A DNA stretch of 64,000 nt, taken from IMG/VR virus record IMGVR_UViG_3300028829_003504, positions 124,001-188,000 of that record, one strand, 5' to 3'. The position numbers and the translations under genes were made by a program. Shown here piece by piece: positions 38,912 to 43,449 of the stretch (within the stretch, counting starts at the first letter, position 1; each line of letters begins with the position of its first letter). The notes under the pieces were generated by a model. The model worked only from the letters and a program-made list of their open reading frames with translations, did no database searches and had not been told where the DNA came from.

Positions 38912-39295
38912 CTAATTACCCTTGAACGTTTGTTTGCAATTCAGGCACTCGTAGTATTCAAAATACGAATCGCATGAAGTCATCTTAGCGGGGCCTGAAC
39001 ATGACGAACAAGAGCCTGCCCAGTCATCACCTTCGTCATCGCTAATAATAGGTTCACCCGTCTGTTTGCGCCATATTTGAAACACGTAATCGAACACGGC
39101 ATCAATTTTTCTGAATTCGCGGAACTTAGTTGACTCAGAACCGTAGCTCGTCATCTCCAAACCGCATACACATAACGGATCGACACACGCTCCAGGCGTA
39201 TGGCTGCGAGGGTCATTAGGAACTAATTCCTCAAAAGGACCCAGCTTACTTGAGTCTTTACCGCATGAACATTTCCAATCAAAAATATCAGTCAT
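38912..39295 (-). CDS. Small Zn-ribbon protein
   Basis: CSCG, CVCG, CSSC, CLNC. Confidence 0.75.
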   Translation of the reverse strand: MTDIFDWKCSCGKDSSKLGPFEELVPNDPRSHTPGACVDPLCVCGLEMTSYGSESTKFREFRKIDAVFDYVFQIWRKQTGEPIISDDEGDDWAGSCSSCSGPAKMTSCDSYFEYYECLNCKQTFKGN

Positions 39296-39340
39296 AGTTT
39301 TTCCTTATTCATATAAGTTTGCTTGCTTCGTTATGGACTC

Positions 39341-39393
39341 ATTATAGCAGGTTAATACCTTTGATTATACTCTTAAATGAGCCGACATTAGGC
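39341..39393 (-). promoter_or_regulatory. TATAAT promoter with upstream GCCTA(A/G)TGCCG-like box (representative copy)
   Basis: Six copies with -10 at 7098, 20723, 20896, 25317, 35929, 39341 and plus-strand TAGGC 47-49 nt further on. Confidence 0.7.
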
Positions 39394-39418
39394 GACGAAA
39401 GATATATACCGCAGACAT

Positions 39419-39450
39419 AAAAAAACCACTGTACTCGAAAGCAAGTGGTT
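39419..39450 (-). terminator. Intrinsic terminator closing the ncRNA cassette
   Basis: AACCACT-TGCTTTCGAGTAC-AGTGGTT followed by TTTTT on the minus strand. Confidence 0.75.
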
Positions 39451-39456
39451 AGTGTT

Positions 39457-39569
39457 AGAATACATTGGGATAAAAAAGAACTGAGTATATTTCAACTCAG
39501 TCCAAAATATCAAAAACTGTTTAACTGATTGGGTTGATAGTTGTCTCACTTCCTATCCCAATGTATTCT
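39457..39569 (-). ncRNA. Structured RNA A (16-bp perfect closing stem, two inner hairpins)
   Basis: AGAATACATTGGGATA / TATCCCAATGTATTCT; inner ACTGAGT/ACTCAGT and TATCAA/TTGATA. Confidence 0.6.
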
Positions 39570-39576
39570 TAATAGG

Positions 39577-39647
39577 TTGAATACCGCATGAGGCAAAAAC
39601 GCGGCTAAACGATTGCTGGTAAATAAGGAGCCTCATGCTGTATTCAA
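39577..39647 (-). ncRNA. Structured RNA B (8+9 bp stem, 35-nt loop)
   Basis: TTGAATAC-x-GCATGAGGC / GCCTCATGC-x-GTATTCAA. Confidence 0.6.
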
Positions 39648-39653
39648 ATGGTC

Positions 39654-39706
39654 GCAACTCTAACTCCTTAAGAGGAACCCCATTCAACCGGAGGAGTTAG
39701 AGTTGC
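39654..39706 (-). ncRNA. Structured RNA C (15-bp perfect stem, 23-nt loop)
   Basis: GCAACTCTAACTCCT / AGGAGTTAGAGTTGC. Confidence 0.6.
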
Positions 39707-39741
39707 TTTTCTACTGTTCGAGTTACGAAGTCAAACAGCAA

Positions 39742-39822
39742 GAAAGTTTCAGGGTTATCTTACGGAAGGGAGAGCCTTGCTCACCTAACAGCCTTATCCT
39801 AACAAAGTTAAATGAAACTTTC
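39742..39822 (-). ncRNA. Structured RNA D (10-bp closing stem)
   Basis: GAAAGTTTCA / TGAAACTTTC; interior has TGTTAGG twice and AAGGC twice on the minus strand. Confidence 0.5.
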
Positions 39823-39863
39823 AGAGGCATGTCTAAATAGAACATGTAAGGAGATTCGTTTAA

Positions 39864-40156
39864 TATACTGTGGGTATTTCCCTAGTAGAAGAACTCAAGC
39901 TGTACCTTAGATACCACACGTTGGCCTTAGTGTTTGTGCTGGGTCTTTGAGTTTACATGCAAAGTGACCTGCCACACAGGTAAATAGTACAGCTCGGTAA
40001 TACGTTTGCGTTTAGTACGTATCGACATTCCTTTCCGATATTCTTACGTTGTGACATAGATACCGTGCGATAGGTAAATAGCCTTTCGTGCAATCGGAGT
40101 TCGCTTCTTCTAGACCCTTAGCGTCGAGTCCTGTTTAAGAAAATACACAAAGTATA
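39864..40156 (-). ncRNA. Structured RNA E (~290 nt, multibranched)
   Basis: Nested stems TATACT..GTATTT/AAATAC..AGTATA, CTAG.AGAAG.AACTC/GAGTT..CTTCT.CTAG, AGCTGTAC/GTACAGCT, ATACGT/ACGTAT. Confidence 0.6.
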
Positions 40157-40162
40157 CTAGTA

Positions 40163-40302
40163 TACTTTACTTAGTGCTACCCACTCAATGAGCTAAGATT
40201 AGGGCCTTGCGTGTGAACGGCGCGAACCTCTGTAGCTCTCTAAACAATGCCTCAACGCAACTTGGCATGGACAGATTAGAGTGAGTACCACTAAAGAAAG
40301 TA
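40163..40302 (-). ncRNA. Structured RNA F (~140 nt, long interrupted closing stem)
   Basis: Minus strand TACTTT-CT-TTAGTG-G-TACTCACTC pairs with GAGTGGGTA-G-CACTAA-GT-AAAGTA (a G-U pair favours minus); inner GAGCTA/TAGCTC and TGCC/GGCA. Confidence 0.6.
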
Positions 40303-40323
40303 GGATAGAGTCCTAGCGAGAAA

Positions 40324-40399
40324 TGGTGGGTCGTGCAAGATTCGAACTTGCGGCAAATTGGTTAAAAGCCAACTGCTCTACCAACTGAGCTAACGACCC
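40324..40399 (-). tRNA. tRNA-Lys(UUU)
   Basis: GGGTCGTTAGCTCAGTTGGTAGAGCAGTTGGCTTTTAACCAATTTGCCGCAAGTTCGAATCTTGCACGACCCACCA; 76 nt cloverleaf with encoded CCA. Confidence 0.97.
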
Positions 40400-40515
40400 A
40401 TAGTACAAACTATATATTAGTGTTTACAGTTTGTATTTTACATAAATACTGGAGGTATACGTACACCAGAATTAAACGTATTATATAGGCGTTGAACGTG
40501 TACGCGTTCTAGCCA

Positions 40516-40618
40516 TGTCCCTGACAGGAATTCGGGTTCTACCTGTAACTTACTATTTGAATTGAGGGTATCGCACCTCGCAGAAACAGCAATGCTCTAA
40601 GCTTTGAGCTATAGGAAC
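40516..40618 (-). ncRNA. tRNA-like RNA G (extended anticodon arm, enlarged T-loop, no CCA)
   Basis: Acceptor GTTCCT/AGGGAC, TA, D-arm GCTC-AAAGCTTA-GAGC, arm TTGCTGTTT/AAATAGTAA capped by GAGG/CCTC, T-stem ACAGG/CCTGT with 13-nt loop. Confidence 0.6.
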
Positions 40619-40644
40619 TTTTCGTTTAATCGCGTATAACAAAA

Positions 40645-40735
40645 TGAACAAGGCTGGAATCGATACCAGCAATGCCAGAATAGGGCTTACCGTAACACGA
40701 GCCTAACTGTTGGTTTATCTTAACTCTACTTGCTC
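40645..40735 (-). ncRNA. tRNA-like RNA H (acceptor and T arm intact, rest remodelled)
   Basis: Acceptor GAGCAAG/CTTGTTC then A; T-arm GCTGG-TATCGATT-CCAGC; starts about 11 nt after an AAACTGTAAA motif. Confidence 0.6.
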
Positions 40736-40746
40736 ACGTATTAATG

Positions 40747-40756
40747 TTTACAGTTT
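40747..40756 (-). promoter_or_regulatory. AAACTGTAAA promoter motif (representative copy)
   Basis: (A)AACTGTAAA core also at about 13840, 14406, 15843, 20829, 40423, 43485, 45353, 52079, 59585, 59608 (minus) and CTGTAAA near 56565, 62574, 62962, 63994 (plus), always oriented with the downstream gene. Confidence 0.7.
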
Positions 40757-40775
40757 TGTATTAAGTAGGATTTAC

Positions 40776-42296
40776 TTAATCTTCTTCGTCCGCAACTAGG
40801 TCACCTTTACCTGCACAGATAAGAGCGAAATTCTTGAGAGCTTTACCATTCGCCAATTGCTTCTTACACCAGAAGCGTATATCAACAGGCTTAACACCAA
40901 GTAAGTCGCAAGTTTCTTTTACCTGTCGCTTGTTACCTAACACCAGTGCTTTGAATGATAACCAAGAACACTTCTTAGCTCCGTGTAAGGGACAATCTTC
41001 GTGGAATTTCATATTACCACGAGTACCGCCTACTACGCCTAACATCTTCAAGAAGTTCCAAGTATCAAACACTGGATCTAGGCCTCTAGCCACACCATCA
41101 GCATCACGAATCCAGATACGTGCAAATGTATCTTGATACTGTAGCCCGCCAAGTTTGTTCTTGATAACTTTCAAGTTGATGAAACGATATTCGTCGTTTC
41201 CTTCGTGCTCAACAGACTTCTCATCCATAGTAGGACCTTTACCCCAACCTGAAGGTAGAGCACGGCTGGTAGATTTTATTCTACAGTCAGAGAAGAATTT
41301 CAACGCTTCACCTCCCGGCTCATACTCAGGATTACCAAACATAGTCGCAGGCTTCTGTCGTAATTGATTAACCCCAAATACTGTCATGCGTTTCTTCTTC
41401 ATAGAACCTTTAATGCGTTTAAGTTCTTTGGAGAACATCCGCGCTTGCAGGGCCATTGCATTGCTACCTTCGTCCGTATCTTCTTGCCTAGGTAACATAG
41501 CAGGATAGGAATCTAGTAGCGCGATTGCTTGCATCATACCATCTGCGGCAGGCACTTTAATTTTGTTATGCTTAGATAAGTACTTAGGGTCATATACAGA
41601 TTTGAATCGCTTGAGTAATTTCTTATCATGAGGGAACAAATAGTAATACTCTTTGCCTAATTTAACTTTATCAGGTAGTATTCTTTTTAGTCGATTATAG
41701 AATTCGAAAAATTCCTCGCCTCCATCAGTGGAGATATAATCAACGATCGGAGGTGTAATTTCCTCACCTGTATCGGGGTCTCTCTCTCCGAAGATTTGGC
41801 TCAACGTTTGCTTAACGCCTTGTGATTTTAGAATACTCTCAATGTAGTCAGGGCTACCTGAACCTTCGTAATCCCAGTAGCTGGCTTTACCCTCAAAGCC
41901 TTGTTTAATTATAGCTGACATTATTGTCATAGCTATTGTTGTCTTAGCGGATTGTTCACCACCAAAGATAGTGTACCAGCCACCTGATACGATACCACCG
42001 CCTATTAATAGATCAAGTGATACTAAACCTGTATGTAAACGAGGTTCGTCTGGGTCAAAAGCTGTACCTGCAAGACCCATCTTCTTCTTAACGTCTGTAA
42101 TGGATTCATCTAACATGTTTTCCAATAGAGATTTCGTTAAGGCGACTGCCTCTGAATGAGCGTTATCTGCAACTAAGGTAGCTTTATCGGAATTCTTGGC
42201 TTTCTTAGTTTTAGGAACATCAGCAACCTCAAGAGCCTTTTTGGCTCCTTTAGTTACTTTGGCTGATTTAGATCTAGTCGCTGTTTTAGTTGCCAT
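40776..42296 (-). CDS. recA: RecA/UvsX-like recombinase
   Basis: TGLVSLDLLIGGGI, Walker A GGEQSAKTT, DYE, LLDSY, ALQARMFS, VNQLR, MFGNPEYEPGGEALKFFSD, KNKLG. Confidence 0.93.
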   Translation of the reverse strand: MATKTATRSKSAKVTKGAKKALEVADVPKTKKAKNSDKATLVADNAHSEAVALTKSLLENMLDESITDVKKKMGLAGTAFDPDEPRLHTGLVSLDLLIGGGIVSGGWYTIFGGEQSAKTTIAMTIMSAIIKQGFEGKASYWDYEGSGSPDYIESILKSQGVKQTLSQIFGERDPDTGEEITPPIVDYISTDGGEEFFEFYNRLKRILPDKVKLGKEYYYLFPHDKKLLKRFKSVYDPKYLSKHNKIKVPAADGMMQAIALLDSYPAMLPRQEDTDEGSNAMALQARMFSKELKRIKGSMKKKRMTVFGVNQLRQKPATMFGNPEYEPGGEALKFFSDCRIKSTSRALPSGWGKGPTMDEKSVEHEGNDEYRFINLKVIKNKLGGLQYQDTFARIWIRDADGVARGLDPVFDTWNFLKMLGVVGGTRGNMKFHEDCPLHGAKKCSWLSFKALVLGNKRQVKETCDLLGVKPVDIRFWCKKQLANGKALKNFALICAGKGDLVADEED

Positions 42297-42300
42297 CTAA

Positions 42301-43449
<1,149 letters not shown>

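What the first reader, a model, noticed from the sequence alone, without database searches (positions are those of the whole stretch)
40516..40618. tRNA-like RNA G with a long replaced anticodon arm
Seen: acceptor stem, U8-A9, canonical GCTC/GAGC D-stem and a 5-bp T-stem are kept. The anticodon arm is extended to 9 bp plus an internal loop and a GAGG/CCTC hairpin, the T-loop is 13 nt and there is no CCA. Retained pairing argues against simple decay. It could be a tRNA mimic (nuclease, synthetase or RNase P decoy) or carry an intron-like insert.
Basis: partly seen in the sequence, partly recalled or inferred. Interest (0 to 1): 0.65.

Follow-up and report, generated by a model that had tools for sequence, protein, structure and literature searches.

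The report
Conserved tRNA-derived RNA in jumbo phage
A marine jumbo phage carries, next to its only tRNA gene, a tRNA-shaped RNA with no anticodon loop; selection has kept its shape in the one related phage found, much like the still-unexplained small RNAs C and D of phage T4.

Summary
On the minus strand, 40618-40517 folds as its minimum-energy structure into the described cloverleaf: a 6-bp acceptor stem, U8-A9, a GCUC/GAGC D-stem, a long arm in place of the anticodon arm, a 5-bp T-stem with a 13-nt loop, and no CCA. Shape alone is weak evidence (z = -1.9; about 0.3 such shapes per shuffled genome). ARAGORN and the Rfam tRNA model do not call it.

The only close relative found (a 311-kb ENA contig, UvsX about 90% identical) has an ortholog that folds the same way. 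The acceptor, D and T stems each carry a compensatory double change. The D-loop and T-loop are invariant. The long arm has a wholly different sequence but still pairs. Four-fold sites in the neighbouring gene are only 51% identical, so the element is under selection and is not decaying.

Its first 26 nt align with genuine phage tRNAs, so it derives from a tRNA. An intron reading fails.

It is the second of two tandem cloverleaves (F and G) behind a phage promoter motif. A covarying helix encloses G, and the pair sits in a conserved non-coding RNA island around tRNA-Lys. Function is unknown. My best guess is a stable tRNA-scaffold RNA. Only two sequences exist and there are no expression data.

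The parts
40739..40756 (-). Promoter-like motif AAACTGTAAACATTAATA. It ends about 3 nt before the first cloverleaf (F).
   Evidence: Two exact copies in the window, at 40756-40739 and 40432-40415, against 0.38 expected. The core ACTGTAAAYA occurs 17 times in the genome, 15 on the gene-coding strand, mostly 25-45 nt before start codons. The motif is conserved in the relative and recurs in more distant relatives.
40646..40735 (-). Cloverleaf F, a 90-nt upstream tRNA-like twin. It has a 7-bp acceptor stem GAGCAAG/CUUGUUC, a weak D-arm, a long arm, and the T-arm GCUGG-UAUCGAUU-CCAGC stacked on the acceptor stem.
   Evidence: It is the unconstrained MFE fold in both phages. The acceptor G.U pair becomes G-C in the relative, and the T-arm is invariant.
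40623..40631 (-). 5' strand (GAUUAAACG) of a helix that encloses cloverleaf G.
   Evidence: It pairs with 40478-40470 in the full-length MFE of both phages. Two pairs show double compensatory changes, A-U to G-C and U-A to C-G.
40517..40618 (-). Cloverleaf G, the finding itself. Acceptor 5' strand 40618-40613; U8-A9 40611-40610; D-arm 40609-40594; A26 40593; long arm 40592-40550; variable GUU 40549-40547; T-arm 40546-40524 with its loop at 40541-40529; C96 40523; acceptor 3' strand 40522-40517.
   Evidence: MFE cloverleaf. The ortholog L010:6717-6825 folds identically. There are double compensatory changes in the acceptor, D and T stems, and both loops are invariant. Model R1 scores it at 124.5 bits, with only one other, very weak match in the genome (11 bits, E 4.8).
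40550..40592 (-). The long arm that replaces the anticodon arm: a 9-bp stem, an internal loop, and the GAGG/CCUC hairpin with an 8-nt loop.
   Evidence: In the relative the sequence is unrelated (about 26% identical columns), yet it forms a CAUCAG/CUGAUG stem with a distal hairpin. No antisense target of 13 nt or more exists in the phage genome.
40470..40478 (-). 3' strand (CGUUUAAUU) of the helix that encloses G.
40415..40432 (-). Second copy of the promoter-like motif, 15 nt before tRNA-Lys.
40324..40399 (-). tRNA-Lys(UUU) with an encoded CCA. It is the only canonical tRNA in the 261,788-bp genome.
   Evidence: ARAGORN. Rfam tRNA model, 75.4 bits.

Best explanation
G is a functional, tRNA-derived cloverleaf domain of a phage non-coding transcript. 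A phage promoter motif (ACTGTAAACA...) starts transcription a few bases before a first tRNA-like cloverleaf, F, and G follows 27 nt later. The spacer before G pairs with the trailer after G, so G sits inside an enclosing helix.

G keeps the parts of a tRNA that the host's tRNA-processing and stabilising enzymes measure: the 12-layer acceptor/T-stem stack, U8, A14, A21 and the D-stem. It has lost everything needed for decoding: the anticodon loop, G18G19 and the canonical T-loop. It therefore cannot act as an adaptor.

I infer that the precursor is cut, possibly first in the enclosing helix and then at the cloverleaf ends by RNase P and a 3' tRNA-processing nuclease. G would then accumulate as a stable small RNA, a natural 'tRNA scaffold' comparable to T4 RNAs C and D. 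The invariant but non-canonical D-loop and T-loop would be the surface that binds its partner. The fast-changing arm would be a lineage-specific module.

Shown: the fold, its conservation and covariation, the tRNA ancestry, the promoter motif and the genomic context. Inferred: transcription, processing, stability and the existence of a partner.
For: The fold is the MFE in the window, in the ortholog and within the full-length transcripts of both phages.

All 36 shared pairs are standard in both sequences. Five pairs changed on both sides, and slid controls give 0-1 such pairs. Seven random transitions among the 30 stem nucleotides would keep every pair and yield three or more double changes with P of about 0.002.

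The D-loop (8 nt), the T-loop (13 nt), U8-A9 and A26 are identical, whereas four-fold sites in the adjacent UvsX gene are 51% identical.

The 5' half matches real tRNAs: 21 of 26 nt (counted by eye on alignment A6) against a phage tRNA-Arg.

The promoter motif is over-represented and strand-biased. No conserved small ORF is present. In the relative the F-G block stays together although its downstream neighbour differs, so it behaves as a unit. T4 has an analogous tandem pair of small RNAs beside a tRNA gene.
Against: There are only two independent sequences, so the covariation statistics are weak; the shuffle control reaches the observed value in 16 of 500 trials.

There is no expression evidence. 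The only sequencing runs holding this DNA are the source DNA metagenome.

The T-loop/D-loop elbow that RNase P normally reads is altered, and the leader and trailer are paired. Both would be expected to hinder RNase P. No CCA is encoded and the phage has no CCA-adding enzyme. No partner has been identified.
Confidence: 0.42

Rival explanations
1. G is a cis-acting processing or punctuation signal. G, together with F, exists only to recruit tRNA-processing nucleases that cut the primary transcript and define the ends of the downstream RNA, as tRNA-like 't-elements' do in plant mitochondria. The excised cloverleaf itself has no function.
For: It lies between a promoter motif and a downstream gene in both phages: tRNA-Lys in the window and a sigma-70-like mRNA in the relative. 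The acceptor/T-stem stack is kept. t-elements are a documented precedent (PMC1920247, listed).
Against: A pure processing signal needs only the minihelix or a canonical elbow. Here 21 non-canonical loop nucleotides are invariant. tRNA-Lys has its own promoter copy. The leader and trailer are paired, which is unfavourable for RNase P.
Confidence: 0.2
2. G is a decoy or sponge for host factors that bind the tRNA body. These could be tRNA-targeting defence nucleases, or modification and processing enzymes. G would work alongside the phage's own tRNA-Lys(UUU), which may replace a host tRNA that has been cleaved.
For: The only tRNA in a 262-kb genome is tRNA-Lys(UUU), and the relative carries three copies. 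From general knowledge, this tRNA is a classic target of anticodon nucleases. The tRNA body is conserved and the locus sits next to that tRNA. The rapid turnover of the arm is compatible with an arms race.
Against: The anticodon loop, which anticodon nucleases read, is absent and the arm is not conserved. The elbow is non-canonical. The phage encodes no tRNA-repair genes such as RtcB, and the only RNA-ligase-domain match is weak and sub-threshold. There are no data on the host's defences.
Confidence: 0.15
3. G is a decaying tRNA pseudogene left over from an older tRNA cluster and has no function.
For: It has a tRNA-like 5' half. It fails every tRNA detector. It lies beside a real tRNA gene.
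Against: Every stem substitution preserves pairing, including three double changes. The loops are invariant while neutral sites are 51% identical. The arm is rebuilt as a hairpin rather than eroded.
Confidence: 0.05
4. G is a tRNA gene interrupted by a short intron in the anticodon arm, or the fold is a chance one.
For: A cloverleaf with an oversized anticodon arm. Shape alone occurs about 0.3 times per shuffled genome.
Against: No anticodon loop can be reconstructed in either phage. The arm sequences are unrelated. The insert, at about 26 nt, is far shorter than the self-splicing introns known in bacterial and phage tRNA genes. ARAGORN with introns allowed is silent. Chance is excluded by the independently folding, covarying ortholog.
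Confidence: 0.03

Closest known systems
Phage T4 RNA C (species 1, 139 nt) and RNA D (species 2, 119 nt)
   Same: Two tandem small non-coding RNAs encoded directly beside a phage tRNA gene on the same strand. RNA C carries a tRNA T-arm next to a closing stem together with long extra arms. The T4 RNAs are classed as late RNAs (PMC9697503), and F-G follows a motif that resembles a T4 late promoter (my comparison, from memory). The function of the T4 RNAs remains unknown (PMC3014915, PMC9697503).
   Different: No sequence similarity was detected: the blastn search of the whole intergenic region against phage records returned only tRNA-Lys-type matches. T4 RNA C has a canonical UUCGAAU T-loop, whereas G has a 13-nt loop. 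G has a full cloverleaf with a D-arm. In T4 the pair follows the tRNA; here it precedes it.
Canonical tRNA (Rfam RF00005)
   Same: A four-arm cloverleaf with U8, A9, A14, A21, a G10-C25 D-stem, a G53-C61 closing pair, and a 12-layer acceptor/T-stem stack. The 5' 26 nt align with real phage tRNAs.
   Different: It has no anticodon stem-loop, no G18G19, no 7-nt T-loop and no CCA. It scores below E=10 against RF00005 and ARAGORN does not call it.
Engineered 'tRNA scaffold' RNAs and herpesvirus MHV68 tRNA-like/miRNA units (from general knowledge)
   Same: A tRNA body is kept to obtain processing and stability, while the anticodon arm is replaced by, or the body is followed by, a cargo hairpin. The viral units come in tandem and are not used for decoding.
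   Different: Those use canonical D-loops and T-loops. The scaffold is man-made, and the MHV68 units are eukaryotic Pol III units. Nothing here shows that the arm is a cargo.
Plant mitochondrial t-elements (PMC1920247)
   Same: Degenerate tRNA-like structures inside transcripts, next to genes, that are used by RNase P and RNase Z to create transcript ends.
   Different: They belong to a different domain of life. They are not known to keep invariant non-canonical loops. No end-mapping data exist here.
Bacterial/phage Y RNA YrlA and the tmRNA tRNA-like domain
   Same: Non-decoding RNAs that mimic part of a tRNA.
   Different: In YrlA the free ends sit where the anticodon stem would be and the RNA works with Ro/Rsr; this phage has no TROVE protein and there is no Rfam match. 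tmRNA lacks a D-stem, carries a tag reading frame and a G3.U70 pair, and ARAGORN finds none.

Membership tests
Canonical tRNA (RF00005) | Scores at or above the family threshold with a tRNA covariance model or tRNA finder | tested here: not met
   No RF00005 match at E<=10, even in a 251-nt search. ARAGORN at default and relaxed settings gives no call on this strand.
Canonical tRNA (RF00005) | 5-bp anticodon stem with a 7-nt loop (U33, anticodon, purine 37) | tested here: not met
   The arm is 9 bp plus an internal loop and a hairpin, 43 nt in all. The ortholog has an unrelated arm.
Canonical tRNA (RF00005) | Elbow nucleotides: G18G19 in the D-loop and a 7-nt T-loop with U54-U55-C56 | tested here: not met
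   The D-loop is AAAGCUUA and the T-loop is UAGAACCCGAAUU, both read directly from the sequence.
Canonical tRNA (RF00005) | Acceptor, D and T stems with the tRNA spacing (U8-N9, N26) | tested here: met
   Covariation is seen in all three stems.
Intron-containing tRNA | Removing an insert restores a standard anticodon stem-loop that is conserved among relatives | tested here: not met
   No such loop can be derived in either phage and the arm sequences are unrelated. ARAGORN -i finds nothing.
tmRNA | tRNA-Ala-like acceptor stem (G3.U70) together with a tag reading frame | tested here: not met
   ARAGORN finds no tmRNA at default settings. Position 3:70 is U.G in the window and C-G in the relative.
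Y RNA / YrlA | Match to the Rfam family, and a Ro/Rsr (TROVE) partner | tested here: not met
   No Rfam match. PF05731 is absent from the phage genome. A host Rsr could not be tested.
T4 RNA C / RNA D type (phage small stable RNAs in tRNA clusters) | Tandem, non-coding, tRNA-like units adjacent to a phage tRNA gene on the same strand | tested here: met
   F and G lie upstream of tRNA-Lys. The T4 layout is shown.
T4 RNA C / RNA D type (phage small stable RNAs in tRNA clusters) | Accumulates as a discrete stable RNA during infection | not testable with these tools
   No RNA run holds this sequence.
T4 RNA C / RNA D type (phage small stable RNAs in tRNA clusters) | Sequence homology to T4 rnaC or rnaD | tested here: not met
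   blastn of window 39300-40800 against 50,697 phage records returned only tRNA-Lys-type matches.
t-element-like processing signal | Transcript ends map to the borders of the tRNA-like structure | not testable with these tools
   This needs 5'/3' end mapping, and no reads are available.

The most novel reading that the evidence does not exclude
F and G, together with the conserved and heavily covarying structured RNA of roughly 700 nt downstream of tRNA-Lys, form a phage 'RNA island'. It would encode a previously undescribed class of tRNA-scaffolded RNAs. The invariant non-canonical loops would dock a specific host or phage protein, and the hypervariable arm would set specificity, for example as a counter-measure to tRNA-directed host immunity. 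This would give the first functional handle on the class to which T4 RNAs C and D belong.
Probability: 0.15. Interest if true: 0.8.

Novelty: new variant of a known kind. Interest (0 to 1): 0.55.

Why it matters
Phages have been known for fifty years to encode tRNA-like small RNAs beside their tRNA genes (T4 RNAs C and D), and nobody knows what they do. Here an unrelated marine jumbo phage lineage has such an RNA. Its tRNA body is held by selection, its decoding parts are gone, its two loops are frozen in a non-tRNA sequence, and its arm is rewritten between close relatives. That pattern says which nucleotides matter. It makes the question testable through loop mutants, arm swaps, pull-downs and RNase P assays on a 300-nt synthetic transcript. 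It also shows that standard tRNA finders and Rfam miss a conserved class of phage RNA genes.

Tried and rejected
- Rfam at gathering and at E<=10 thresholds, on the window and on sub-regions, gave only tRNA-Lys.
- ARAGORN with introns allowed and thresholds relaxed produced noise everywhere and nothing at G.
- blastn of the intergenic region against phage records returned only tRNA-Lys-type hits.
- Exact-pattern scans of viral contigs with the G D-arm, the G T-arm and both loops found nothing real. One hit, L012, was a chance match in a coding region. Another, L120, carries the D-arm word but showed no T-arm or closing stem by eye and no ARAGORN call; I did not score it with model R1.
- The metagenome scan with the 17-mer T-arm returned 89 loci. 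One is the same phage (L060, 100% identical). The rest are coding-region coincidences.
- The genome-contig scan with the two-loop pattern returned 7 loci, which is the chance expectation, and none scores with model R1.
- blastn, nhmmer and the covariance model found no G or F homolog in more distant relatives (UvsX 27-66% identical, and the 83% intein-bearing one). This covered whole records for five of them and UvsX flanks for the others. The model's best hits there are genuine tRNAs.
- Homologs of the relative's sigma-like gene and of the 127-aa neighbouring gene gave no further loci carrying the RNA.
- The RNAalifold closing helix between the extreme 5' end and the 3' tail is rejected. I prefer the F acceptor stem plus the spacer/tail helix, which both single-sequence folds give and which carries two double compensatory changes.
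- The arm has no complementarity of 13 nt or more elsewhere in the phage genome, so an antisense role is not supported.
- The phage genome lacks Ro/TROVE, a CCA-adding enzyme and RtcB, and has only a sub-threshold RNA-ligase-domain hit.

Full report
**Where it is**

The window is bases 124001-188000 of a 261,788-bp virus record with direct terminal repeats. Almost all genes lie on the minus strand. The genes around the finding encode a phage sigma factor, a single-strand DNA-binding protein and a UvsX/RecA-like recombinase. Their nearest annotated relatives are jumbo phages of Erwinia and Dickeya and the environmental 'Phage NCTB', at 45-57% protein identity.

The finding lies in a 1.5-kb stretch with no ORF longer than 53 codons, between the recombinase gene (40776-42296) and a 127-codon gene (38912-39295). 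This stretch also holds the only canonical tRNA of the whole genome, tRNA-Lys(UUU) at 40399-40324 on the minus strand.

**Checking the observation**

All of the following are present:
- a 6-bp acceptor stem followed by an A/C mismatch;
- U8-A9;
- a GCUC/GAGC D-stem with an 8-nt loop;
- a 9-bp stem, internal loop and GAGG/CCUC hairpin where the anticodon arm should be;
- a 3-nt variable region;
- a 5-bp T-stem with a 13-nt loop;
- no CCA.

Taken alone, the fold is not convincing. The energy z-score is -1.89. A descriptor written for this shape finds only this site in the real genome but also 0.32 sites per shuffled genome. No detector recognises it: not ARAGORN at default settings or with introns and low thresholds, and not the Rfam tRNA model at E<=10 in a 251-nt search.

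**The ortholog**

The recombinase has one close relative in the protein collection. It was reported at 87% identity, or 90% over my own alignment, and sits on a 311-kb ENA contig (loci L010 and L133). That contig has a block about 80% identical to window 40758-40450. The relative's copy of G (L010:6717-6825) folds on its own into the same cloverleaf at -33.9 kcal/mol.

The two copies differ at seven stem positions, and every change keeps pairing:
- U2-A becomes C-G, and U3.G becomes C-G, in the acceptor stem;
- C-G becomes U-A in the D-stem;
- A-U becomes G-C in the T-stem.

Seven transitions placed at random in the 30 stem nucleotides would keep all pairs and give three or more double changes with P of about 0.002.

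The D-loop AAAGCUUA, the T-loop UAGAACCCGAAUU, U8-A9, A26 and the A7/C96 mismatch are all identical. By contrast, four-fold degenerate sites in the adjacent recombinase gene are only 51% identical. The long arm behaves in the opposite way: only about a quarter of its aligned columns are identical, yet the relative still forms a 6-bp CAUCAG/CUGAUG stem with a distal hairpin.

A covarying body, frozen loops and a rewritten arm together are the signature of a selected RNA, not of decay or chance. There are only two sequences, so the formal shuffle control is weak (16 of 500). Slid controls give 0-1 double changes against 5 observed.

**tRNA ancestry**

A covariance model built from the two copies (acceptor, D and T stems only) finds G and only one other, very weak match in its own genome (124.5 bits against 11 bits). 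In more distant jumbo-phage relatives its best hits are genuine tRNA-Arg genes. The first 26 nt of G align colinearly with those tRNAs and with the neighbouring tRNA-Lys. The relative's copy matches a tRNA-Arg(CCU) at 21 of 26 positions. G is therefore tRNA-derived.

It is not a tRNA with an intron. No 7-nt anticodon loop can be restored in either phage, the arm is the least conserved part, and an insert of about 26 nt is far shorter than the self-splicing introns known in bacterial and phage tRNA genes.

1. Twenty-seven nucleotides upstream lies a second cloverleaf, F (40735-40646). It has a 7-bp acceptor stem GAGCAAG/CUUGUUC, where the G.U pair is G-C in the relative. It has a long arm and a T-arm, GCUGG-UAUCGAUU-CCAGC, stacked on the acceptor stem. 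This is the unconstrained MFE in both phages.

2. F starts about 3 nt after the motif AAACTGTAAACATTAATA. A second copy of the motif sits 15 nt before tRNA-Lys. Its core, ACTGTAAAYA, occurs 17 times in the genome, 15 of them on the coding strand and mostly 25-45 nt before start codons. It recurs in relatives. It resembles the T4 late promoter (my comparison, from memory).

3. In the full-length folds of both phages, the spacer before G pairs with the trailer after it (40631-40623 with 40478-40470). Two pairs of this helix changed on both sides. I prefer this helix to the alternative closing helix that RNAalifold proposed.

4. No small ORF is conserved in the block.

5. In the relative, F-G is followed by an inserted sigma-70-like gene and other genes before three tRNA-Lys copies. 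F-G is therefore a unit in its own right, not just a tRNA leader.

**What it most likely does**

Still present are the parts of a tRNA that processing and stabilising enzymes measure: the acceptor/T-stem stack, the D-stem, U8, A14 and A21. Gone are the parts used in decoding and in the canonical elbow.

The 21 invariant loop nucleotides are non-canonical. That points to a specific partner rather than to the general tRNA machinery. The arm changes faster than synonymous sites, which suggests either a swappable module or a region under diversifying pressure.

I therefore favour, at about 0.4, a stable tRNA-scaffold small RNA excised from the F-G precursor. This would be comparable to T4 RNAs C and D, two tandem small RNAs beside T4 tRNA-Arg whose roles remain unknown (PMC3014915; PMC9697503).

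The rivals are:
- a pure processing signal like plant mitochondrial t-elements (PMC1920247);
- a decoy for proteins that bind the tRNA body;
- a pseudogene;
- an intron-bearing tRNA;
- chance.

The last three are contradicted by the comparison with the ortholog. The first two are not excluded. Nothing in the phage genome points to a dedicated partner: it has no TROVE/Ro, no CCA-adding enzyme and no RtcB.

**Limits**

No further homolog was found despite four pattern scans of viral contigs for G, one metagenome scan, one scan of genome contigs, model and nhmmer searches of relatives, and look-ups through neighbouring proteins. The only public runs that hold the sequence are the DNA runs of the source marine metagenome. 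Transcription, processing and stability are therefore inferred, not shown.

**Verdict**

G is a real, selected, tRNA-derived non-coding RNA element, a new variant of the long-known but unexplained phage tRNA-like small RNAs. It is embedded in a larger conserved RNA island. Interest is moderate to high for RNA and phage biologists, limited by having only two sequences and no expression data.

Noticed in passing
window 40646-40735 (minus strand): A second tRNA-like cloverleaf (F, 90 nt) lies immediately upstream of G and starts about 3 nt after the promoter motif. It has a 7-bp acceptor stem, a T-arm with an 8-nt loop containing UCGA, and a long arm. It is conserved and folds the same way in the relative (L010:6598-6689).
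   Followed up: partly
window 39400-40200 (minus strand); L133:16550-17260: The roughly 1 kb of non-coding DNA downstream of tRNA-Lys is 71-73% identical to the relative, against 51% at neutral sites. RNAalifold predicts 183 pairs there, 23 of them with both sides changed and the pair kept. These include a multi-branched domain of about 300 nt closed by a long helix, a 15-bp perfect hairpin (about 39700-39650), and terminator-like hairpins at 39503-39478 and about 39452-39420. There is no Rfam match. This is a candidate large structured phage RNA beside tRNA genes.
   Followed up: partly
whole genome, e.g. window 40739-40756, 40415-40432, 59616, 45360, 13847: The motif ACTGTAAAYA occurs 17 times, 15 on the gene strand and mostly 25-45 nt before start codons. 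It also recurs in related jumbo phages. It is probably the promoter of a phage-encoded sigma factor and resembles the T4 late promoter TATAAATA.
   Followed up: partly
window 40324-40399; L133:15217-15538: tRNA-Lys(UUU) is the only tRNA in this 262-kb genome, and the close relative carries three tandem copies. More distant relatives carry a single tRNA-Met at the matching place instead. A lone tRNA-Lys(UUU) is what one would expect of a replacement for a host tRNA cleaved by anticodon nucleases.
   Followed up: no
L121:5113-5407 (minus strand), IMG/VR contig of 43 kb: An unrelated, smaller phage contig has two tandem tRNA-like units of 131 and 151 nt, lying after an SSB gene. Each has a closing stem of 7 or 10 bp, a tRNA-Leu-type D-arm that lacks the GG, a long middle part, and the same T-arm as F (GCUGGAAUCGAAUCCAGC). 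ARAGORN and Rfam call neither unit. Non-decoding tRNA derivatives may be widespread in phages.
   Followed up: partly
L133:12896-13774 (= L010:6896-7774): In the relative, a sigma-70-like gene (regions 2 and 4) is inserted directly after F-G. Its nearest relatives are cellular RpoD/RpoS-type proteins at only about 34% identity. The window's phage has no gene at this position.
   Followed up: partly
window 40776-42296 and its homologs: Many homologs of the UvsX/RecA-like recombinase in related phages are 700-890 residues long and carry intein and homing-endonuclease domains (PF14890, PF03161). The window's copy has no intein.
   Followed up: no
window 42517-42591 (minus strand): A run of GAT repeats near the 3' end of the SSB gene encodes a poly-aspartate acidic tail. 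It produced spurious weak snoRNA matches in the relaxed Rfam search.
   Followed up: no
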